Positions 3,683-61,580 of a stretch of DNA of 64,000 nucleotides are shown here, one piece after another. The position numbers and the translations under genes are program-made. Each line of letters starts with the position of its first letter. Positions within the stretch are counted from its first letter, which is position 1. Where the stretch lies: the IMG/VR virus record IMGVR_UViG_3300046660_000488, positions 62,001-126,000 of that record, one strand, 5' to 3'. The notes beneath the pieces are model-generated. The model worked only from the letters and a program-made list of their open reading frames with translations. It did not search any database and was not told the DNA's origin.

Positions 3683-4876
3683 GTGGACTTGAAGAACGTC
3701 ATCACCCCCAGCCTGCAACGTCTTCACGACGTTCTGACCAAGAGGGACCACGGTCTGTGGTTCGTCGGCGGGATGGTGCGTGACCTTCTGCTTGGCATCG
3801 AGCCCAAGGACGTGGACCTGTGCACCACCGCGACGCCCGAGCAGATGATCGCCATCTTCACCGAAGAGGGCATCCGCTTCGAGCCGACCGGCCTTCAGCA
3901 CGGCACTCTGACCGTGATCATCGACGGCGAAGTCTACGAGATCACCACGCTGCGGATCGACACCGATCAGGACGGCCGCCACGCGACCGTGGTCTACACC
4001 ACAGACCTGATCCTCGATCTGGGCCGCCGCGACCTGACCATCAACGCGATGGCCATGGATTTCGACGGCAACCTGATCGACCCGTTCAACGGCGCCCAAG
4101 ACCTGACCGACAAGCGCATCCGCTTCGTCGGCAACCCAGATGACCGGATGCGGGAAGACTATCTCCGCATCCTGCGCTGGTTGCGCTTCCACGACCGGAT
4201 CGCCACCGGCACGCCGCTGGACGCCGATACCGTGGCTGCGGCGCGCCGCAACGCGGACGGTCTGCGGAAGATCAAGCGCGAGCGGGTCTGGATGGAAATG
4301 GCGAAGATCGTCTCGGGCAACAATGGCCCGCTGATGCTCCACAACATCTACGCCATGCAACTGGCCGACTGCATCGGCCTGCCTGCTCTGTATCGCCGCA
4401 CCGGGGACGTCTACCCGGACTGCCCGCCCGGCGGCATCGACCGCATGATGGACGTCGCCAAACTGTCCAGCAATCCCGTGACCCGGTTGGTCGCTGTGCT
4501 GAGGAACGAGGCGACGCACCTGCCCATCGCGTGGAAGTGGAGCGCTGAAGAGCGTGACCTGTGCATTTTCTTGGCCGAGCGGGTGGCGGCTCCCGGTTTC
4601 GGCTGGAAGCATATGCTGGCCGTCAGCGGCGTCCGTCGCGAATGGGTTCTGGAGTTGGCCTACCTGCGGGGAGGCCGCGAAGGTCTGTTCCAAGCCATCC
4701 GCGACTGGGACGTCCCGATGTTCCCGCTGAAGGGCGGCGACCTGATCGCGGAAAAGGGCTACAAGCCCGGCCCCATCGTCGGTGAGACCGTCAAGCACCT
4801 GAAGCACATCTGGGCGACGACCGAATATCTGGCGACCCGTGAAGAGCTTCTGAGGCTCGTCGTCACCAGTGCATAG
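3683..4876 (+). CDS. cca: CCA-adding tRNA nucleotidyltransferase (class II)
   Basis: VGGMVRDLLLG..PKDVDL, DLGRRDLTINAMA, EDYLRILRWLRF, ERVWMEMAK motifs. Confidence 0.93.
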   Translation: MDLKNVITPSLQRLHDVLTKRDHGLWFVGGMVRDLLLGIEPKDVDLCTTATPEQMIAIFTEEGIRFEPTGLQHGTLTVIIDGEVYEITTLRIDTDQDGRHATVVYTTDLILDLGRRDLTINAMAMDFDGNLIDPFNGAQDLTDKRIRFVGNPDDRMREDYLRILRWLRFHDRIATGTPLDADTVAAARRNADGLRKIKRERVWMEMAKIVSGNNGPLMLHNIYAMQLADCIGLPALYRRTGDVYPDCPPGGIDRMMDVAKLSSNPVTRLVAVLRNEATHLPIAWKWSAEERDLCIFLAERVAAPGFGWKHMLAVSGVRREWVLELAYLRGGREGLFQAIRDWDVPMFPLKGGDLIAEKGYKPGPIVGETVKHLKHIWATTEYLATREELLRLVVTSA

Positions 4877-13548: not shown

Positions 13549-14171
13549 TTTCCTTTGATGCGCGGGATTTCGCGCAGGATCAGGCCATAGTAATCCATGT
13601 AGGCTTTGTACTCCGGCATGGCCTCGATCTCGCGGAGCATGTCTTCAGGCGGCTTGGTCAGCGCAAACTGCGTGACCGCGATGGCGGTGGCCGGGTCCAC
13701 GTCGGGACGCATGGCCCACGCCAGAGCGTACTTGACCCCATCGCGCAGACGCCACGGGTCCTCGACCTCGGTGGCCAGCTTTTCGATGTAGCAGATCATG
13801 TAGTGCATCAGGGCTTGTTCATAGCCCGTTTGCTTGATGACGCGCGGCTCCGCCGTGCCGGTCAGGATGCTCTGAGCCACGTAGGCGGCCGAGCCATCTG
13901 CGGCGGCTTGATAGCGCAGCTTCTGCTCAACGTAGATCGCTTGGGCGAGGCCGGGCGTTGTCGGCTGGAGGCCCAAGTTCTCGTGCATGTCGGTGATCAT
14001 GGCGCGGAACTGCTCGGACGACGCCAGAATCTTCGCCGGGTCGAGTTCGACCGGCTTGATCTTCCGCACGTATTTCTTCGCGCCCTTGCCGACTTTCAAA
14101 CCCACGCTATGCCACCGTTTCTGGTTTACGAGAAACAGCAGCATAGCATCGTTTTGGTTGAAAGCAATCAC
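13545..14171 (-). CDS. Hypothetical protein (208 aa)
   Basis: Overlapping start/stop packing. Confidence 0.7.
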   Translation of the reverse strand: MIAFNQNDAMLLFLVNQKRWHSVGLKVGKGAKKYVRKIKPVELDPAKILASSEQFRAMITDMHENLGLQPTTPGLAQAIYVEQKLRYQAAADGSAAYVAQSILTGTAEPRVIKQTGYEQALMHYMICYIEKLATEVEDPWRLRDGVKYALAWAMRPDVDPATAIAVTQFALTKPPEDMLREIEAMPEYKAYMDYYGLILREIPRIKGK

Positions 14172-15406
14172 TCTTCGCCCAAGCTGGAGTACTTGTAGTC
14201 CCTCCAGTCGAGGCCGCCGATCAGGTCGCGGATACCGTCAACCCGAGCTTGCGTGCCAGCGGTCGGGTGAACCGCCTTGGCGATGGTCGCTCGGATCAGG
14301 TCAGCGGGGTCGGCGCCGCGCTTGATCAGGAACATGTACTGGGCCTCCGGCTGCTTCAGGTTCGCGTTGACGTACTGCGCGAATTCCTTCTGGTCGTCGA
14401 TCCGAATGCTGTCGTACAATTCCTTCACCTGAACAGCGCGCTCTTCCACCGCTGCGGCGAAGTCGGCCGCATAGGCTTCCACGGCCTTGCGGTCGTTCTC
14501 TTCCATGAACGGCTTGACGTCGTCCACGGTGTTGTGCGCGATCATCGCCAGCACGTCTTTCTCGTGCTGGAGGAAGTCCTTGGTCTTGTGAATCTGGCAG
14601 TACCAGAGGCCCTTGACCTTGTACATCCGGCCGTCGTGGAACCGGACGATGTAGCCTTCCATGCCCTGAACGTCGTGGACCTCAGCCATGAACGTCTCGA
14701 TGCTCTCCACGCCGCCGGGCAGGGCGCGCACGACTTCCATGCCCGCTTTCTCGGCGTGCCGCACCATCTTGTCGTACGGCATGTATCCGCCAAACAGGTT
14801 GTCGCGAAGCGCCAGCAAGACCAGACGGTCTTCCGGATAGTCGATGACGATCTTCTGCTTTCGCGAGCACCACTCGAACAGCGGCGTCCAGCCGTGGTTG
14901 ATCATGTTGGCCGCCCATTCCGCGTAATGCGGGTTGGCCTTGATCCACTCGTTGACCGGCTTGGCCACGTCGGTCTCGCCCATCTTCGTGCACCAGACGA
15001 GGCCGTCAGCCTGAGCCGGGCCAGCGCCCGTCCACATCGGGTTGATCATCGACCCGTCCATCTTTTCGAGGACGTGGTGCGGCTCCGACCAGTCGATCAC
15101 GTCGATCTGGCTCTCGGGCTTCTCACCGATGTTGAAGAACTTGGCGAACTTGCGCGCGAGGATGCGGCCGTCCTTGGAGAACGTCAGACCCCGGCATTCA
15201 CGCAGCACCGTGTACTCGCGGTTCAGCGCGGGATCGTCGGTGTTCGGGAACGGGAAAATGCCGTCGAAGCTGATGACGTAATTGAAGATCACGTAATCAC
15301 CACGGTCTGCTTCGATGAACGCGGACGTTCCAGTACGCGCGTTGTGGTTCGCAACAGCCTGACGCACTTCGTCAAGCGTGATGTTCATCGGGAAATGGTA
15401 TCGCAT
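14168..15406 (-). CDS. rnlA: RNA ligase, T4 Rnl1 family
   Basis: RECRG, KFFNIGE, motif I EKMDGSMI, FEW, EGYIV, MYKVK. Confidence 0.93.
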   Translation of the reverse strand: MRYHFPMNITLDEVRQAVANHNARTGTSAFIEADRGDYVIFNYVISFDGIFPFPNTDDPALNREYTVLRECRGLTFSKDGRILARKFAKFFNIGEKPESQIDVIDWSEPHHVLEKMDGSMINPMWTGAGPAQADGLVWCTKMGETDVAKPVNEWIKANPHYAEWAANMINHGWTPLFEWCSRKQKIVIDYPEDRLVLLALRDNLFGGYMPYDKMVRHAEKAGMEVVRALPGGVESIETFMAEVHDVQGMEGYIVRFHDGRMYKVKGLWYCQIHKTKDFLQHEKDVLAMIAHNTVDDVKPFMEENDRKAVEAYAADFAAAVEERAVQVKELYDSIRIDDQKEFAQYVNANLKQPEAQYMFLIKRGADPADLIRATIAKAVHPTAGTQARVDGIRDLIGGLDWRDYKYSSLGEE

Positions 15407-16748: not shown

Positions 16749-16917
16749 CTGAAATGCCTTCGTTCAAATCGGTTTGATCAAATCGCGCGCCGTAGCGTCG
16801 CTCGGAGACCGCTTGCAGCGGCCCCCGTGCGGGCTCAGCGACTTTCTTGGCCGGTAGGCGGACAAATAGGCCCACCAGCATCAGGACGCCAATCGAGAGA
16901 CCAGCCAGCGCCAGCAT
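16699..16917 (-). CDS. Possible small membrane-anchored protein (72 aa)
   Basis: ATG overlaps the TAA of the vWA gene (TAATG); N-terminal hydrophobic helix; overlaps the next gene by 50 nt. Confidence 0.4.
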   Translation of the reverse strand: MLALAGLSIGVLMLVGLFVRLPAKKVAEPARGPLQAVSERRYGARFDQTDLNEGISDGEEAEADPIGRHHPG

Positions 16918-18350
16918 TACGCGGCCATCGCCATGTACTGCGACGGCACGTAGCGGTTCTTGCGGTTGGCGATCTCTTCCTTCGAGTCGTAATGGGCCGT
17001 GATGCCGAAATTGGCCTTGGCCTTGGGGTTGTCGTGGACGACGAACAGGGTGTCGCAGTAGCCTTCCTCGCCCCACGAACCGACGTGACCATCGGTGAAC
17101 AGGATGAAGCGGACCGGCTCGATGCCCTTCTCGCGCATGAATTTCCAGTTCGACTCCAAGATCGTGCCACCGCCGCCGGTGATCCGGGTCATCCGGTAAT
17201 CGTCGATCTCGTGGATGTTCTCGCCCGTGAATTCTTGGAACGAACCCTCGTCCACGTGGCCGTCGAAACACCACAGGCGAACGCGGAAATCGCGGAATTC
17301 TTCCATGATCCCCTTCACTTCGGAGAGCATGTCGCGGATCATTTCCGGGCCGACCGAACCGGACACGTCGATGGCGATGCAGATGTCGATGGTATCGACG
17401 AAATTCTGCCCCGGCAGGAGCGCGCCGATGCTATAGGACTTGCGCGAAATCCGCTGGAACGTGAAGTCATCACGGATCGACGAGCGGATGTGCGCGTCGA
17501 GCATGCTCCGCCAGTCGAGCTTCGGGTTGATCAGTTCGTCAACGACCCGCAGGACGTTGCCGGGGACCTTGCCGGGCTTGGTCTGCTGGATCGTCTGGAT
17601 CAGGTCAGAGAGAATGTCCGAGCGGATTTTCTCCAAGTCCTTTTCCGTCAGGACCGGAGGACCGTTCTTGGCCGAGATCGTGATGTCGATTTCGTCGGGC
17701 AGACCGTCGCCATTTCCGTCGCCATCATCATCCCCGTCTTCACCGTCCTCGCCGTTTTCTCCGCCCTTGCCTTTCTGCTTCGGACCTTTTTCCTTGCCCT
17801 TCTCACCACCTTCTCCCTCGTCGTCCTTCTTGCCCTTCTTTTTCTTCGGCTTCGGCGCCGAGGCGTCAAGGTGCTGATCGAGGGGCATGACGATGGTAAG
17901 CTGGTTCTTTTCCTTCAGCTTACGGAGGATTTCGTATAGCTCTTCCGACGACATTTCGTCGGTGTACTTGTCGTTGTACAGGCCAAGCTGCGGCATCCGG
18001 CCGATGTCGGCCTTCTTGAGCGTGTAGTTGACGATGTAGTCGATGGCCATGTTCCACAGGTCCGGATCGCGGTGACCGCGACGGCAGATGTGGTCATAGA
18101 CGCAGTGAAGCACCTCGTGCGCGAGCACGAAGTAAAGCTCTTTCTTCTTGAGGTTCTTGACGAATTCCCGGTTGTAGAAAAGGTGACGGCCATCCGTGGC
18201 CATCGTGCTCAGCCACTCACCAGCCTCGACTTCGTGCAGACGGGAAGCCATGCCACCGAAGAACTGCATTTCGAAGAGCATGTAGACCCGCGCCGCAATA
18301 AGCTTGCGGTAGACGGGGTCGTTCATAGTCGGCTTCGTGCCTTCGGCCAT
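16917..18350 (-). CDS. DUF2201-type metallopeptidase-like + vWA domain protein
   Basis: TMATDGR, LAHEVLH (HExxH), WNMAIDYIVN, Lys/Gly/Asp linker, AIDVSGS MIDAS, GGGT, FTDG. Confidence 0.9.
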   Translation of the reverse strand: MAEGTKPTMNDPVYRKLIAARVYMLFEMQFFGGMASRLHEVEAGEWLSTMATDGRHLFYNREFVKNLKKKELYFVLAHEVLHCVYDHICRRGHRDPDLWNMAIDYIVNYTLKKADIGRMPQLGLYNDKYTDEMSSEELYEILRKLKEKNQLTIVMPLDQHLDASAPKPKKKKGKKDDEGEGGEKGKEKGPKQKGKGGENGEDGEDGDDDGDGNGDGLPDEIDITISAKNGPPVLTEKDLEKIRSDILSDLIQTIQQTKPGKVPGNVLRVVDELINPKLDWRSMLDAHIRSSIRDDFTFQRISRKSYSIGALLPGQNFVDTIDICIAIDVSGSVGPEMIRDMLSEVKGIMEEFRDFRVRLWCFDGHVDEGSFQEFTGENIHEIDDYRMTRITGGGGTILESNWKFMREKGIEPVRFILFTDGHVGSWGEEGYCDTLFVVHDNPKAKANFGITAHYDSKEEIANRKNRYVPSQYMAMAA

Positions 18351-24351: not shown

Positions 24352-24707
24352 CAGGCGAATTTCACGTTGGAGCCGTTGAGCGCTTGGAGCGCGGCGAGGC
24401 AGACCGCCATCGTGGTCGTCTTGGCGTTGACCATCTGATAGACCCGGCTGTCGTCACGGTAGAAGCACGAGTTGTAGGTGTCCGATTCAGGGATGTGCTG
24501 AATCCGGAATTCCCAGCCCTTGGCCGAGAAGAAATCGACGACGCGGTAAGCGTCGTCGATCACTGTTGAGAACGCGGGTAGGGGAACTCTTTCACGATTA
24601 TCCTGCCCGACCATGTAACGTTGGCCGTCCTCGTTGATCACCACGACACGCCATAGGCGGGTGGCGACCAAGGAGTCCATGGCGGGTCCTGCGTCCGGAA
24701 GCGCCAT
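24351..24707 (-). CDS. Phage ABA-sandwich-like domain protein
   Basis: FSTVIDDAYRVV...AKTTTMAVCLAAL pattern. Confidence 0.6.
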   Translation of the reverse strand: MALPDAGPAMDSLVATRLWRVVVINEDGQRYMVGQDNRERVPLPAFSTVIDDAYRVVDFFSAKGWEFRIQHIPESDTYNSCFYRDDSRVYQMVNAKTTTMAVCLAALQALNGSNVKFA

Positions 24708-24937
24708 CAGTCGCGGCGCCGCTTGGCCTTCGCAGCACGGGAAACGGCTTCCGCCTTCTGGCGGCGACGCTTGGTGCTGGGCTTTTCGTAGGCTTCGCGT
24801 GAGCGAACCTCACGGATCAGACCCTCGCGCTTGACCTTCTTGCTGAAGATGTGGATGGCGGCTTCAACGTTGTTGCCGCGAACATCGACAGACAGGCCAC
24901 GCTTGTTTTCAAAGGGTCCAACTTTATGGACGGACAT
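24707..24937 (-). CDS. rpsU: Ribosomal protein bS21
   Basis: V.VRGNNVEAA..FSKKVKREG..REV..REAYEKPS.KRRR. Confidence 0.93.
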   Translation of the reverse strand: MSVHKVGPFENKRGLSVDVRGNNVEAAIHIFSKKVKREGLIREVRSREAYEKPSTKRRRQKAEAVSRAAKAKRRRD

Positions 24938-38634: not shown

Positions 38635-38723
38635 GCAGAGGCCACCTTCGGGTGGCCTTTGTGCTATTGACTTCCCGCCAAAACAGTATAGATTGGAATC
38701 TCAACTTCACGGGAGAGCCGATC

Positions 38724-39026
38724 TTGAGCCAAGTCGCCCAGACGATCATTGCCCAACTTGGTGGCCATCGCTTCATCGCGATGACTGGCGCCAAGCTGGT
38801 TCGTATGGAAGACGGCCTGATGATCAACCTGCCTCCCAAGATGAAGACCAAGGACCGGATCAACAAGGTCATCATCCGCCTCGACGTCGGCAAGGATGTG
38901 TACACGGTCACCTTCGGCCGGTTCTGGAAGCTCGACTTCAATCCCATCGTCGAGCTTGACCGGATCGAGGCTGAAGGCCTTCGCGATGCGTTCGAGCGCC
39001 ACACCGGCCTGCGGACCTCGCTGTGA
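38724..39026 (+). CDS. Conserved phage hypothetical protein
   Basis: VAQTIIAQLGG.RFIAMTGAK pattern; TTGACT promoter and GGAG RBS upstream of TTG. Confidence 0.75.
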   Translation: MSQVAQTIIAQLGGHRFIAMTGAKLVRMEDGLMINLPPKMKTKDRINKVIIRLDVGKDVYTVTFGRFWKLDFNPIVELDRIEAEGLRDAFERHTGLRTSL

Positions 39027-39517
39027 ACGTCACCACCATCGACCTCGAATTGATCCGGCCCAACGTCAACGGGGTGACCTATGGCGGCATGGGGCGCGTG
39101 TTCGCTCGCACGCCGACCCTCCTGCTGGTCTGGTTTAAGGGCGCGAACGTCAAGGGCGGCGGCTACGATTACATCTGGTCACCCGCGACCATGCGCGTTC
39201 TCGACCGCAAGGACCACGGGTCGCGCGGCCTGTCGCGCCGCATCTGCCAAGGCGAACGCCTGCACCAGCGCATCTTCACGCGGTTTGCCGACCAGATCGA
39301 CGAGCACCTTGGGGAAGGCTTCCACAAGCTGCTGGAGATCGACAAGACCGTCGTCGTGGGCGACAACGAGCCGTTCAGCAAGTACGGCCACGAAATGCCC
39401 ATCACCGGCCATGAATTCGGCTACGAGCACATGAAGGAACAGGAGAGCAAGCGCGCGGCTCTGATCGCGGCTGGCTACTCCGGCCTTGAGCTTGAAATGC
39501 TGGTGCAGCGCCTGTGA
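39023..39517 (+). CDS. Hypothetical protein
   Basis: GTGA overlap. Confidence 0.7.
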   Translation: MNVTTIDLELIRPNVNGVTYGGMGRVFARTPTLLLVWFKGANVKGGGYDYIWSPATMRVLDRKDHGSRGLSRRICQGERLHQRIFTRFADQIDEHLGEGFHKLLEIDKTVVVGDNEPFSKYGHEMPITGHEFGYEHMKEQESKRAALIAAGYSGLELEMLVQRL

Positions 39518-39771
39518 GTACGCTGGCCGACACCGCCGTCCGGATGATCAAGGCCAGCGGCCTCATGACCGTGGTCTGGGGTGATGGCATCCTCGTGGAC
39601 ATCTGCTTCAACGCCGGTGTCCCGTACGAGCATCCCCTGCACGCCATGCAGAAGACCCTCGCCGCGCTGGCCAAGGACGAACGCTTCGAGGCGTTCCATA
39701 TCCGTGGCAACGATTCCCGTGGCCGTCAGCGCCGAGTGCGCGCGTTCAAGCTGAAGGAAGCCTTCCGATGA
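39514..39771 (+). CDS. Hypothetical protein
   Basis: GTGA overlap. Confidence 0.7.
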   Translation: MSTLADTAVRMIKASGLMTVVWGDGILVDICFNAGVPYEHPLHAMQKTLAALAKDERFEAFHIRGNDSRGRQRRVRAFKLKEAFR

Positions 39772-39908
39772 CCGAAGCCCACAAGCAAGGCGAAGCCGCC
39801 TATAAGGCCGGGAAGTCCAGCACACAGAACCCCTACGCATCGGGGACGACGGAACACGACGATTGGCAAGAGGGCTGGTGGGAGACCAAGGATCGCTACA
39901 TGGGCTAA
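39768..39908 (+). CDS. Ribosome modulation factor (RMF/CrpP)-like protein, 46 aa, not in ORF track
   Basis: MTEAHKQGEAAYKAGKSSTQNPYASGTTEHDDWQEGWWETKDRYMG matches the A..xG..A..xG.....xPY......W..GW pattern; ATGA overlap with upstream gene. Confidence 0.75.
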   Translation: MTEAHKQGEAAYKAGKSSTQNPYASGTTEHDDWQEGWWETKDRYMG

Positions 39909-39991
39909 GCACAGTTTCTCAACTGTGCTGTCTTGACTTGCCTGTGGAATAGTGCATACTGTGTTTCTCGATCACAGATGGAGGTAACCGC

Positions 39992-41932: not shown

Positions 41933-42024
41933 GGAGCCGTGGTAGAGAGGCTTATTGCACCCGTTTCGAAAGCGGGAGTGGTCGTAAAAACCCACCGAGG
42001 GTTCGAATCCCTCCGGCTCCGCCA
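41933..42024 (+). tRNA. tRNA-Ser(CGA)
   Basis: CCCGT-TTCGAAA-GCGGG, long variable arm, GGTTCGAATCC, G73-CCA. Confidence 0.95.
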
Positions 42025-42053
42025 AGTACATCGAATATCTGAAGCTCCTTCGC

Positions 42054-42143
42054 GGAGGGCGGGCAGGCCGGTAATGCAGCGCACTGCTAATGCGTACAGC
42101 CCTTCAAACGGCTGAGAGGGTTCGATTCCCTCGCCTTCCGCAA
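42054..42143 (+). tRNA. tRNA-Ser(GCT)
   Basis: GCGCA-CTGCTAA-TGCGT, long variable arm; 3' end GCAA (CCA not encoded). Confidence 0.92.
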
Positions 42144-42155
42144 AGGAGCTTCAAT

Positions 42156-42247
42156 GGAGCCGTGGCCGAGTGGCTTAAGGCGCTCGCTTGGAAAGCGAGT
42201 GTGGTCGTAAAAACCCACCGTGAGTTCGAATCTCACCGGCTCCGCCA
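42156..42247 (+). tRNA. tRNA-Ser(GGA)
   Basis: CTCGC-TTGGAAA-GCGAG; acceptor stem and variable arm identical to Ser(CGA). Confidence 0.95.
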
Positions 42248-42251
42248 ACAT

Positions 42252-42338
42252 GTTGTGATGACCGAGTGGTCGAAGGTGCGGGATTGCAACCCCCGTAGCG
42301 TAAAGCTCACGTGGGTTCGAATCCCACTCACAACTCCA
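42252..42338 (+). tRNA. tRNA-Cys(GCA) with atypical long variable arm
   Basis: CGGGA-TTGCAAC-CCCCG, U73-CCA, variable hairpin AGC-GTAAA-GCT. Confidence 0.88.
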
Positions 42339-42362
42339 AATACGCTCCGTGGTCTGTCTTGT

Positions 42363-42446
42363 GGGCAGGTGGGTGAGTGGCTGAAACCGGAGGACTGTAA
42401 CCCCTCTCTGAAAGGCGCGCTGGTTCGAATCCAGCTCTGCCTACCA
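42363..42446 (+). tRNA. tRNA-Tyr(GTA)
   Basis: GAGGA-CTGTAAC-CCCTC, variable arm, A73-CCA. Confidence 0.92.
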
Positions 42447-42478
42447 GTCAGACCACGGAGCAAAATGTTCTTTCTCAT

Positions 42479-42563
42479 GCACAGGTGGTGTGAGTGGTTT
42501 AAGCCGGGAGACTGTAAATCTCCTCCGAAAGGGACGCTGGTTCGAATCCAGCCCTGTGCACCA
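42479..42563 (+). tRNA. tRNA-Tyr(GTA), second copy
   Basis: GGAGA-CTGTAAA-TCTCC, A73-CCA. Confidence 0.94.
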
Positions 42564-42610
42564 GAAAGAACATTTGAGCCAGTCTAGCGAAAGCAAAGCT
42601 GGTTCATTTT

Positions 42611-42686
42611 GCTAGTGTAGCTCAGTTGGTAGAGCGTCGGCTTGTGGAGTCGATTGTCGCGGGTTCGAGCCCCGCCGCTAGTTCCA
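42611..42686 (+). tRNA. tRNA-His(GTG) lacking G-1 (G1.U72, U73)
   Basis: TCGGC-TTGTGGA-GTCGA; base -1 is T. Confidence 0.9.
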
Positions 42687-44167: not shown

Positions 44168-44243
44168 GGTGGTGGTAGTTCAGCGGTAGAACGCCAGACT
44201 GTGACTCTGGATGTCGCGGGTTCGATCCCCGTCCATCACCCCA
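44168..44243 (+). tRNA. tRNA-His(GTG) with canonical G-1:C73
   Basis: G-GTGGTGG/CCATCAC-C-CCA; CCAGA-CTGTGAC-TCTGG. Confidence 0.95.
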
Positions 44244-44337
44244 AATTCTGGTTGACCAAATACCCCGGCGGGTGTTAGGTTGGCCAATCGATCAACTCCT
44301 CACGCTTGTATTTCATTGCAGCAAGAGGAGAAGAAAG

Positions 44338-44589
44338 ATGCAAGTTTTCGTACTGACCGAGTCGCATCACATCGCGTACGAGGGAACGTGGACCGTAGTC
44401 CAAGGCGTCTATCTGACGCGGGATGAAGCCTTCGCGAAAGTGAAGGAACGCCTGCCAAAGGAAGCCGACCATGGGCAAGAAAAGTTCATGATCGTTCGGA
44501 GCCGTAGTGCAGACGAGCAGTGGTTCAGGCTACGTGAAATGACCGTGGGCGAGTACCAAGGTCGTGACGTTCTGTTCTATGAAGACTAA
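44338..44589 (+). CDS. Hypothetical protein
   Basis: GAGGAG RBS; start MQVFVL. Confidence 0.7.
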   Translation: MQVFVLTESHHIAYEGTWTVVQGVYLTRDEAFAKVKERLPKEADHGQEKFMIVRSRSADEQWFRLREMTVGEYQGRDVLFYED

Positions 44590-44641
44590 CGAGTGGGCGG
44601 GCTTCGGTCCGCCCATTCCACCCGCCGGACCGACGTGATAC

Positions 44642-44732
44642 GGAGGGTTGGCCGAGCGGTAAGGCTCTGGTCTTGAAAACCAGTGACAGGGTGACGAGCC
44701 CTGCGGGGGTTCGATCCCCTCACCCTCCGCCA
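44642..44732 (+). tRNA. tRNA-Ser(TGA)
   Basis: CTGGT-CTTGAAA-ACCAG, long variable arm, G73-CCA. Confidence 0.95.
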
Positions 44733-47998: not shown

Positions 47999-48073
47999 TG
48001 GCGCCTTCAGCCGGGCTCGAACCGGCGACCTACAGATTTAGAGTCTGCTGCTCTACCGCTGAGCTATGAAGGC
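47999..48073 (-). tRNA. Amber suppressor tRNA (CTA), G73
   Basis: GCCTTCA/TGAAGGC, GCAGA-CTCTAAA-TCTGT, GGTTCGAGCC, CCA encoded. Confidence 0.92.
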
Positions 48074-48079
48074 GTCCTT

Positions 48080-48155
48080 TGGTGATCACAGTCGGGCTCG
48101 AACCGACGACCCGCAGATTTAGAGTCCGCTGCTCTACCAACTGAGCTATGCAATC
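48080..48155 (-). tRNA. Amber suppressor tRNA (CTA), A73
   Basis: GATTGCA/TGTGATC, GCGGA-CTCTAAA-TCTGC, CCA encoded; TTGACC promoter upstream. Confidence 0.92.
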
Positions 48156-61322: not shown

Positions 61323-61400
61323 GACGCGGTGTCCCGAGTCGGCTAGGTACGTGGTCCGCAAGATCATGGCACGGTGGTTCAAGTCCATCCCGCGTCACCA
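61323..61400 (+). tRNA. Atypical tRNA with GCA anticodon (C33, A73)
   Basis: GACGCGG/CCGCGTC, GTGGT-CCGCAAG-ATCAT, GGTTCAAGTCC, CCA. Confidence 0.65.
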
Positions 61401-61420
61401 ATCTCTCTCAGCGATTTTAT

Positions 61421-61497
61421 GACGGCATGGCAGAGTGACTATGCACCAGATTGCAAATCTGGATTAGGGGTCGGTTAAAATCCCCCTGTCGTCTCCA
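61421..61497 (+). tRNA. tRNA-Cys(GCA) with degenerate T arm
   Basis: GACGGCA/TGTCGTC, CCAGA-TTGCAAA-TCTGG, U73-CCA; T loop lacks TTCG. Confidence 0.7.
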
Positions 61498-61504
61498 AGG
61501 TTTC

Positions 61505-61580
61505 GGGGCCTTAGCTCAGTTGGTAGAGCGCCTGCTTTGCAAGCAGGATGTCATCGGTTCGAGTCCGATAGGCTCCACCA
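61505..61580 (+). tRNA. tRNA-Ala(TGC)
   Basis: CCTGC-TTTGCAA-GCAGG, G3.U70, CCA. Confidence 0.96.

What the first reader, a model, noticed from the sequence alone, without database searches (positions are those of the whole stretch)
39768..39908. Hidden 46-aa RMF-like (ribosome hibernation) protein
Seen: below the ORF-track cut-off and translationally coupled (ATGA). AHKQGEAAYKAGKS...NPY...WQEGW parallels RMF AHQRGYQAGIAGRS...CPY...WLGGW (recalled from memory). Established: RMF dimerises 70S ribosomes and blocks the anti-SD region; it is typical of gammaproteobacteria. Inference: the phage may silence or protect host ribosomes, in a host lineage that probably lacks RMF.
Basis: partly seen in the sequence, partly recalled or inferred. 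Interest (0 to 1): 0.6.

Follow-up and report, generated by a model that had tools for sequence, protein, structure and literature searches.

The report
Acidic RMF-fold mini-protein in a megaphage
A real 46-residue gene of a 578-kb phage has the two-helix fold of the bacterial ribosome-silencing protein RMF but lacks nearly all of RMF's RNA-gripping basic residues, so it is an ordinary member of a widespread, uncharacterised family of phage and plasmid mini-proteins and probably not a ribosome hibernation factor.

Summary
Window 39768..39908 (+) is a 46-aa ORF whose ATG overlaps the stop of the upstream gene (ATGA). Its GC3 matches its neighbours, and a hairpin and a promoter-like site follow it. 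It matches Pfam RMF (PF04957) above the curated cut-off. Its AlphaFold model (pLDDT 96.8) has RMF structures as the three best PDB matches.

The functional reading does not hold. The protein is acidic (pI 5.1, net charge -3.3), whereas 104 true RMF orthologues all have pI 9.1 or higher. It has no N-terminal extension, so R3, K5, R6 and R8 are absent. R11, R15, R37 and R45 are replaced by E, Q, H and W. It scores 10.5 bits on an RMF-orthologue HMM (orthologues 104-134) and 72.5 bits on an HMM of its mostly acidic, metagenomic relatives.

The same fold occurs in dozens of cultured phages of alpha-, beta- and gammaproteobacteria, some already labelled "ribosome modulation factor", and on plasmids. 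It is often found as 2-5 tandem copies. It has no conserved neighbour and is sporadic among kin megaphages.

Most likely it is a stand-alone accessory protein that binds a protein partner (inferred). I rate it a new member of a known, functionally uncharacterised kind, with modest interest.

The parts
39768..39908 (+). 46-aa ORF (P0001) with the RMF/CrpP two-helix fold. Predicted helices are residues 3-13 and 28-45, joined by a loop carrying the NPY motif. Acidic, pI 5.1.
39755..39771 (+). Translation start region: AGGA (39755-39758), a 9-nt spacer, and the ATGA overlap (39768-39771) of the start codon with the stop of the upstream gene.
   Evidence: read directly; ORF ends
38652..39771 (+). 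Three upstream ORFs (124, 164 and 85 aa) joined by 4-nt overlaps into one translationally coupled unit with the 46-aa ORF. None has a Pfam match. Only the 124-aa ORF matches PHROGs, in families of unknown function (phrog_9437 and, weakly, phrog_28795). None is conserved next to RMF-like genes elsewhere.
39908..39929 (+). 9-bp hairpin with a 4-nt loop starting at the last base of the stop codon (z -3.6 against shuffles for the 56-nt stretch). It has only a weak T tract, so it may be a terminator or an RNA end-stabilising element. This marks the end of the operon.
   Evidence: not called by the strict terminator scan
39933..39960 (+). Sigma-70-like promoter match (TTGACT, 16 nt, CATACT) in front of the next gene set (39992 onward).
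   Evidence: consensus match only

Best explanation
The ORF is a genuine, expressed-type phage gene. It encodes a 46-residue member of the RMF/CrpP-fold family (Pfam PF04957) and belongs to the mostly acidic branch found in phages, plasmids and metagenomes. It keeps the residues that build the two-helix mini-core: G8, A11, G15, N21-P22-Y23, W33, G36 and W37. It has lost the basic N-terminal extension and the arginines through which true RMF holds 16S rRNA, and its surface charge is inverted. It is therefore not a working RMF orthologue. It is the last cistron of a four-gene translationally coupled unit in the replication/RNA-repair/tRNA region of a 578-kb phage related to Atu_ph07 and Phosso. 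It is a sporadically distributed accessory gene with no conserved partner gene. The rest is inferred, not shown. I think it most likely acts as a small stand-alone binding module that docks, through the acidic face of helix 2 (D32, E35, E39, D42), onto a positively charged, probably nucleic-acid-binding, surface of a host or phage protein and blocks or tunes that protein. It probably does not bind rRNA. The frequent tandem multi-copy forms of the module in relatives fit a binding or decoy role better than an enzymatic one.
For: Gene reality: Pfam match over the cut-off, GC3 frame signal, ATGA coupling and a Shine-Dalgarno-like site.
Fold: pLDDT 96.8 with two helices. The three best PDB matches are all RMF: 9iot_y, 2jrm and 6h4n_v, with TM 0.71-0.74.
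Not an RMF orthologue:
- pI 5.08 and charge -3.3, against pI 9.1 or higher and charge +1.7 to +9.7 in 104 orthologues.
- Of the 11 conserved basic positions of RMF, only R24 is kept, as K16.
- 10.5 bits on the RMF-orthologue HMM against 104-134 for orthologues, and 72.5 bits on the relatives' HMM built without the query.
- The NCBIfam RMF equivalog scores 20.6 against a cut-off of 40.
Family character:
- 101 relatives at E<=1e-3 among 1.84 billion representatives. Of the 45 single-domain ones, 37 have pI below 6.
- 56 of the 101 are longer than 80 aa, and most of these carry 2-5 copies of the module. Net charges reach -87, and the ten longest that were scanned have no other Pfam domain.
Mobile-element setting: phage-like contexts for three relatives, at least 45 BFVD phage proteins at probability 1.0, and Pseudomonas and Aeromonas plasmids.
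Accessory status: found in 2 of 5 kin megaphages and not syntenic, with no conserved neighbours.
No hibernation partner: no HPF/S30AE gene in the genome.
Against: No experiment exists for any acidic member of the family, so the binding-module mechanism is inference from charge, size, fold and distribution.
- The query's charge (-3.3) is only moderately acidic.
- Some relatives are neutral or basic: 5 of 45 have pI above 8, and Milano gp060 has pI 7.9. The family may therefore not share one function.
- The conserved residues are almost all core residues, so no conserved binding surface could be identified.
- The phage also encodes a bS21 homologue 15 kb away. In E. coli, S21 lines the RMF pocket, which keeps a ribosome-linked role possible.
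- The relatives' alignment was selected by similarity to the query, so the 72.5-bit score partly reflects that selection.
Confidence: 0.6

Rival explanations
1. One reading: a phage RMF that binds the host 30S at the anti-SD region, silences or protects ribosomes and drives 70S dimerisation.
For: True homology and the same fold as RMF. G23, which is important for dimerisation, is kept as G15. The phage invests in translation: 14 tRNAs in the window, a bS21 homologue and a CCA-adding enzyme.
Against: The N-terminal extension with R3, K5, R6 and R8 is absent. R11 is E, R15 is Q, R37 is H and R45 is W. These residues are reported to bind 16S rRNA or to be needed for binding and dimerisation. The net charge is negative, whereas every orthologue is basic. 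It scores 10.5 bits on the orthologue HMM. No HPF partner is encoded.
Confidence: 0.08
2. A ribosome-directed factor that works differently from RMF. For example, it could bind a basic ribosomal protein near the RMF pocket (S1, S7, S21, or the phage's own bS21). Or it could act against host hibernation so that dormant ribosomes stay usable for the phage.
For: It has the RMF fold with inverted charge. The phage encodes bS21. The RMF pocket is ringed by S2, S7, S9 and S21, and RMF touches S1.
Against: bS21 and the RMF-like gene do not co-occur among kin megaphages: both in G000 and G001, bS21 only in G002 and G005, RMF-like only in G004. The RMF residues that touch S1 (R37, Q39) are not kept. 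There is no conserved neighbour. No direct test was possible.
Confidence: 0.1
3. A CrpP-like enzyme that modifies a small molecule such as a fluoroquinolone.
For: It shares a Pfam family with CrpP, with weak matches to the NCBIfam Rmf/CrpP models.
Against: The CrpP-related model scores 14 bits against a cut-off of 35. A 46-residue two-helix protein has no plausible active site. The enzymatic claim for CrpP itself has been contested: Zubyk and Wright 2021, which I know only as reference 33 of PMC9495688 and could not read.
Confidence: 0.01
4. Not a gene: a chance open frame in GC-rich DNA that happens to resemble RMF.
For: It is very short. GC-rich phage DNA carries many spurious ORFs; a 145-aa antisense ORF overlaps this one.
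Against: It matches Pfam over the curated cut-off and has 101 database relatives. The model has pLDDT 96.8. The GC3 periodicity is correct in this frame only, and the antisense ORFs have a flat profile. The 4-nt coupling to the upstream gene is exact.
Confidence: 0.02

Closest known systems
Ribosome modulation factor RMF of E. coli and other gammaproteobacteria (PDB 6H4N chain v, 9IOT, 2JRM; NCBIfam NF011162)
   Same: It has the same helix-linker-helix fold (TM 0.71-0.74, rmsd 1.6-2.5 A). The core residues are shared: A12, H13, G16, A19, G23, S25, P30, Y31, W40, G43, W44 and E46 in RMF numbering. The size is similar.
   Different: There is no basic N-terminal extension. Ten of RMF's 11 conserved basic positions are lost. 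The pI is 5.1 against 9.1 or higher. C29 is replaced by N. The gene is on a phage rather than a chromosome. It fails the NCBIfam equivalog cut-off.
Annotated phage 'ribosome modulation factor domain' proteins, e.g. Agrobacterium phage Milano gp060 (QBQ72082, 46 aa), with related hits in phages 7-7-1 and OLIVR4 and Pseudomonas phage Ep020
   Same: Same length class and same motifs. Each is the last or an inner gene of a tightly packed run of small phage genes. Local identity is 45-52%. All are uncharacterised.
   Different: Milano gp060 is near neutral (pI 7.9), while the query is acidic. There is no synteny, and these phages are unrelated 68-98-kb phages.
BFVD structural neighbours: uncharacterised proteins of Burkholderia phage BcepSaruman, Caulobacter phages CcrSC and CcrBL9, Rhizobium phage RHph_I1_6, Pseudomonas phage MR4 and Delftia phage IME-DE1
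   Same: The predicted fold is nearly identical (TM up to 0.94, rmsd 0.3-1.9 A, probability 1.0). They are small phage proteins, and several are already named 'Ribosome modulation factor'.
   Different: Sequence identity is only 19-38%. Function is unknown in every case. I could not compare charges because their sequences were not at hand.
CrpP and CrpP-related proteins of Pseudomonas ICEs and plasmids (NCBIfam NF041886, NF041856)
   Same: They belong to the same Pfam family, are small and are carried on mobile elements. tblastn finds 122 plasmid records, mostly Pseudomonas.
   Different: The query is below both NCBIfam cut-offs (22.5 against 28, and 14 against 35). CrpP is longer (65 aa, from my own knowledge).

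Membership tests
RMF, true ribosome modulation factor (orthologue) | Two-helix RMF fold with conserved core (G16, A19, G23, P30-Y31, W40, G43-W44) | tested here: met
   AF2 pLDDT 96.8. The three best PDB matches are all RMF. Core residues align.
RMF, true ribosome modulation factor (orthologue) | Basic N-terminal extension with R3, K5 and R8 that binds 16S rRNA h28 | tested here: not met
   The query starts two residues before helix 1, at the position of RMF L9. R3 is conserved in 98, K5 in 105 and R8/K in 98 of 105 orthologue rows.
RMF, true ribosome modulation factor (orthologue) | R11 and R15 in helix 1 (rRNA backbone contacts); R37 (S1 contact); R45 (dimerisation) | tested here: not met
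   These positions are E3, Q7, H30 and W38 in the query.
RMF, true ribosome modulation factor (orthologue) | Small basic protein | tested here: not met
   The query has pI 5.08 and charge -3.3. The 104 orthologues have pI 9.1 or higher, median 10.5.
RMF, true ribosome modulation factor (orthologue) | Scores as an orthologue on curated or purpose-built models | tested here: not met
   NF011162 scores 20.6 bits against a cut-off of 40. My own orthologue HMM gives 10.5 bits against 104-134 for orthologues.
RMF, true ribosome modulation factor (orthologue) | Binds 30S near the anti-SD region and, with HPF, forms 100S | not testable with these tools
   This needs sucrose gradients or cryo-EM. No HPF gene is in the phage genome.
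Pfam PF04957 (RMF family in the broad sense, Rmf/CrpP fold) | Score over the gathering threshold | tested here: met
   31.7 bits against 27.9, E 1.6e-7, profile positions 11-52 of 53. 30.8 bits in the six-frame genome search.
NCBIfam NF041886 Rmf/CrpP family protein | Score over the curated cut-off | tested here: not met
   22.5 bits against 28. 27 of the 45 sequences in the alignment (the query and 44 relatives) match at E<=0.01.
NCBIfam NF041887 Rmf-like phage protein and NF041856 CrpP-related | Score over the curated cut-off | tested here: not met
   13.2 bits against 40, and 14 bits against 35.
Acidic phage/plasmid branch of the RMF fold (informal group defined here) | Motif G..A...G.....NPY..GT.EH.DW..GW, no basic N-terminal arm, acidic or neutral charge, carried on a mobile element | tested here: met
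   Alignment A1. 72.5 bits on the HMM built without the query. 37 of 45 single-domain members have pI below 6.

The most novel reading that the evidence does not exclude
A charge-inverted RMF mimic that acts on the host's hibernation machinery instead of on rRNA. For example, it could bind a basic protein of the RMF pocket (S1, S7, S21, or the phage's own bS21), or host RMF itself. This would keep or return dormant ribosomes to use when the megaphage infects starved cells. It would be a phage anti-hibernation factor, and the many acidic relatives in other phages would share that role.
Probability: 0.07. Interest if true: 0.75.

Novelty: new member of a known kind. Interest (0 to 1): 0.3.

Why it matters
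It matters mainly as a caution and as a pointer. As a caution, the label 'ribosome modulation factor' is already attached by annotation pipelines to many small phage proteins. For this one, and for most of its near relatives, it is probably wrong in the functional sense, because the rRNA-binding arm and charge are missing. As a pointer, the RMF fold has a large, mostly acidic branch on phages, plasmids and ICE-like elements, often multiplied into very acidic tandem arrays. No member has a known function. One well-chosen experiment on a cultured-phage homologue would annotate hundreds of genes. If the role turned out to be ribosome-linked after all, it would add a new way in which phages handle dormant hosts.

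Tried and rejected
- Related loci for the gene itself: the protein is too short for the search for related loci, and alignment A1 is too variable for it.
- Word-index protein search: it found only the protein itself. I therefore ran the exhaustive HMMER search.
- Host assignment:
  - megablast of the region against cultured phages found nothing.
  - The CCA-adding enzyme found only distant hits in MAG contigs of mixed taxa.
  - A search with the phage bS21 over 401 genomes gave at most 56% identity and no taxon names.
  - The host is left open.
- Conserved neighbours: tblastn of the seven flanking ORFs against six loci that carry relatives found none.
- Link to phage bS21: there is no co-occurrence among five kin megaphages.
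- HPF partner: none in the genome.
- Domain fusions that could hint at function: the ten longest relatives have no Pfam domain except RMF repeats. The PHROG families hit are all of unknown function.
- Two-domain relative: the fold has pLDDT 90.9 but pTM 0.61, so whether the modules pack against each other is inconclusive.
- Complex prediction: not used, because no candidate partner emerged and neighbouring genes alone are not reason enough.
- Literature: I found no experimental work on phage RMF-like proteins. The paper contesting CrpP's enzymatic role is not held.
- Other points: no alternative genetic code was used, and TAG still ends about 15 of 81 GC3-supported ORFs in the window.

Full report
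**1. What is there**

Window 39768..39908 (+) is an open frame of 46 codons ending in TAA.
- That ORF overlaps the 164-aa ORF (39023..39517) by GTGA, and the 164-aa ORF overlaps the 124-aa ORF (38652..39026) in the same way. The small gene is therefore the last cistron of a four-gene translationally coupled unit.
- An AGGA sits 9 nt before the start, and no other start is available upstream in the frame.
- GC at the third codon position is 0.77 in this frame and 0.54 and 0.50 in the other two. The neighbouring genes have 0.78-0.87, and the overlapping antisense ORFs are flat at 0.62.
- A 9-bp hairpin begins at the last base of the stop codon (39908-39929). The 56-nt stretch folds with z = -3.6 against shuffles.
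- A TTGACT-16-CATACT promoter-like site follows at 39933-39960, so the transcription unit probably ends here.

The ORF is real, and it lies below the usual 60-aa cut-off.

**2. The genome around it**

The window is bases 62001-126000 of a 578,292-bp IMG/VR virus record rated complete. The record has an exact 127-bp terminal repeat and 59% GC.

The window carries:
- 14 tRNA genes;
- a CCA-adding/poly(A) polymerase-type enzyme, a T4 Rnl1-type RNA ligase and both subunits of a type II topoisomerase;
- a DNA-polymerase exonuclease-like gene just upstream;
- a ribosomal protein bS21 homologue.

The large terminase is 57% identical to that of Sinorhizobium phage Phosso (469 kb) and 56% to Agrobacterium phage Atu_ph07 (490 kb). 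It is 55-75% identical to those of uncultured phages of 415-608 kb. This is a megaphage of that lineage. The host is not established.

**3. Is it RMF-like? Yes, in sequence and fold**

- Pfam RMF (PF04957) matches at 31.7 bits against a cut-off of 27.9 (E 1.6e-7), over profile positions 11-52 of 53.
- A profile of 45 sequences (the query and 44 relatives) aligns to E. coli RMF with hhalign probability 88%, E 2.8e-6.
- With that alignment AlphaFold2 gives mean pLDDT 96.8, with helix 3-13, a loop and helix 28-45.
- In the PDB the three best Foldseek matches are all RMF: E. coli 9IOT and 6H4N and Vibrio 2JRM, with TM 0.71-0.74 and rmsd 1.6-2.5 A. The E-values are weak, as expected for 46 residues.
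- The shared residues are the small and aromatic ones that build the mini-core: G8, A11, G15, P22-Y23, W33, G36 and W37. These are also the invariant or nearly invariant columns of the relatives' alignment.

**4. Is it an RMF? No**

I collected 104 bona fide RMF orthologues of 52-61 aa, mostly named by their sources.
- All are basic: charge +1.7 to +9.7 and pI 9.1 or higher, median 10.5. They conserve R3, K5, R6, R8, R11, R15, R24, K26, R37, R45 and R51.
- The cryo-EM study of the E. coli hibernating ribosome states that Arg3, Lys5, Arg8, Arg11 and Arg15 hydrogen-bond the 16S rRNA backbone, and that R37 and Q39 touch S1 (10.1101/382572).
- A review records that R3, K5 and R11 matter most for ribosome binding, and G23 and R45 for dimerisation (PMC8778775).
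- In the query the whole N-terminal arm is missing, because the protein begins at the position of RMF L9. R11 is E3, R15 is Q7, R37 is H30, Q39 is D32, R45 is W38 and R51 is Y44. Only R24 survives, as K16.
- The protein has 8 acidic and 5 basic residues, pI 5.08 and charge -3.3.
- It scores 10.5 bits on an HMM of the orthologues, which themselves score 104-134. It scores 72.5 bits on an HMM of its own relatives built without it.
- It is under the cut-offs of all four NCBIfam models of this fold.
- The genome encodes no HPF.

An rRNA-lined pocket is an unlikely home for a negatively charged protein that lacks every phosphate-binding arginine. I put RMF-type action at about 8%.

**5. What it belongs to**

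- The word-index search found only the protein itself.
- The exhaustive HMMER search over 1.84 billion cluster representatives found 101 relatives at E<=1e-3. None is close; the best single-domain one is 52% identical.
- Of the 45 single-domain relatives, 37 have pI below 6 and the median charge is -5.2.
- 56 hits are longer than 80 aa, and most of these carry 2-5 tandem copies of the module. Some are 500-640 aa with net charges of -53 to -87. The ten longest that I scanned have no other Pfam domain.
- The contigs of three relatives are typical phage arrays of small same-strand genes: T4_Y16D, HNH, DUF3799, phage ProQ-like and CsrA.
- In BFVD at least 45 phage proteins match the model at probability 1.0, with TM up to 0.94. 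They come from phages of Burkholderia, Caulobacter, Rhizobium, Pseudomonas, Delftia, Achromobacter, Xanthomonas, Gluconobacter and Serratia. Several are already named 'Ribosome modulation factor'.
- Agrobacterium phage Milano has a 46-aa 'ribosome modulation factor domain superfamily protein', and its genome paper mentions two such genes (PMC6588377).
- tblastn also finds the module on 122 plasmids, mostly Pseudomonas megaplasmids.
- PHROG families hit by the relatives have no assigned function.

The gene is thus one more member of a widespread, catalogued, functionally unknown family of mobile-element mini-proteins.

**6. Distribution and partners**

- Among five kin megaphages only two have any match. 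In the closest one (terminase 75% identical) the module is the C-terminus of a 108-aa ORF in a different neighbourhood.
- None of the seven flanking ORFs has a homologue beside RMF-like genes elsewhere.
- bS21 and the RMF-like gene do not co-occur among the kin.

So the translational coupling is local packing and is not evidence of a conserved complex. I did not run a complex prediction for lack of a candidate.

**7. How it most likely works**

Shown:
- a stable two-helix module;
- core residues conserved, surface variable and mostly acidic;
- an acidic stripe on the exposed face of helix 2 (D32, E35, E39, D42, spaced 3-4-3), read from the sequence and the helix limits;
- frequent tandem multiplication of the module;
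- sporadic, mobile-element distribution.

Inferred: it is a stand-alone binding module that docks on a basic, probably nucleic-acid-binding, surface of a host or phage protein and blocks or tunes it, as many small acidic phage proteins do.

I hold the classification, including 'not a functional RMF', at about 0.85-0.9, and this mechanism at about 0.3. The combined figure of 0.6 in the report reflects both. A fold of a two-module relative (pLDDT 90.9, pTM 0.61) did not settle whether modules pack against each other.

**8. Comparison with the known, and novelty**

It works like nothing yet characterised. It looks like RMF but fails RMF's defining functional features. It sits in the broad Pfam family with CrpP. 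CrpP's proposed enzymatic role is disputed in a paper I know only as a citation and could not read. Chromosomal RMF is reported to be confined to gammaproteobacteria (PMC13411936), while the fold is common in phages of alpha- and betaproteobacteria. My verdict is a new member of a known kind. The mildly new element is the observation that this branch is charge-inverted relative to RMF and often tandemly repeated, which I did not find described.

**9. Limits**

- No expression data could be obtained.
- The host is unknown.
- The relatives' alignment was chosen by similarity to the query.
- The charges of the BFVD neighbours were not checked.
- All functional statements beyond fold and residue content are inference.

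Noticed in passing
window 24707..24937 (-): A 76-aa ribosomal protein bS21 homologue encoded by the phage (PF01165, 55.9 bits). Three of the five kin megaphages also carry one or two copies. The best identity to 401 bacterial genomes searched is 56%.
   Followed up: partly
window 47999..48155 (-): Two tandem tRNAs with a CTA anticodon (amber suppressors, which ARAGORN labels Pyl). TAG still ends about 15 of 81 GC3-supported ORFs in the window, so wholesale TAG recoding is not evident here.
   Followed up: partly
window 41933..42686, 44169..44732, 61323..61580 (+): Three tRNA clusters with 12 genes: Ser x4, Cys x3, Tyr x2, His x2 and Ala. The first array starts about 2 kb downstream of the RMF-like gene.
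   Followed up: no
window 3683..4876 (+) and 14168..15406 (-): A CCA-adding/poly(A)-polymerase-family enzyme and a T4 Rnl1-type RNA ligase. Together with the tRNA arrays they suggest a tRNA maintenance and repair toolkit.
   Followed up: no
window 16917..18350 (-): A DUF2201 putative metallopeptidase with a VWA-like domain (122.9 bits), of the type usually paired with a MoxR-type ATPase. Its role in a phage is unclear.
   Followed up: no
proteins P0003, P0004, P0006, P0016, P0018, P0042, P0053 (metagenomic, not in the window): Proteins of 456-638 aa, each with one to four clear copies of the RMF-like motif. They have net charges of -53 to -87 and no Pfam domain other than RMF, and the architecture is unexplained.
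   Followed up: partly
G000:C1 ends (outside the window): The 578,292-bp record has an exact 127-bp repeat at its two ends. This fits a circularly closed assembly, or short terminal repeats, of a complete megaphage genome.
   Followed up: yes
L090 1498..1824 (-) (kin megaphage G001): In the closest kin the RMF-like module forms the C-terminal third of a 108-aa ORF, with an unrelated N-terminal part and different neighbours.
   Followed up: partly
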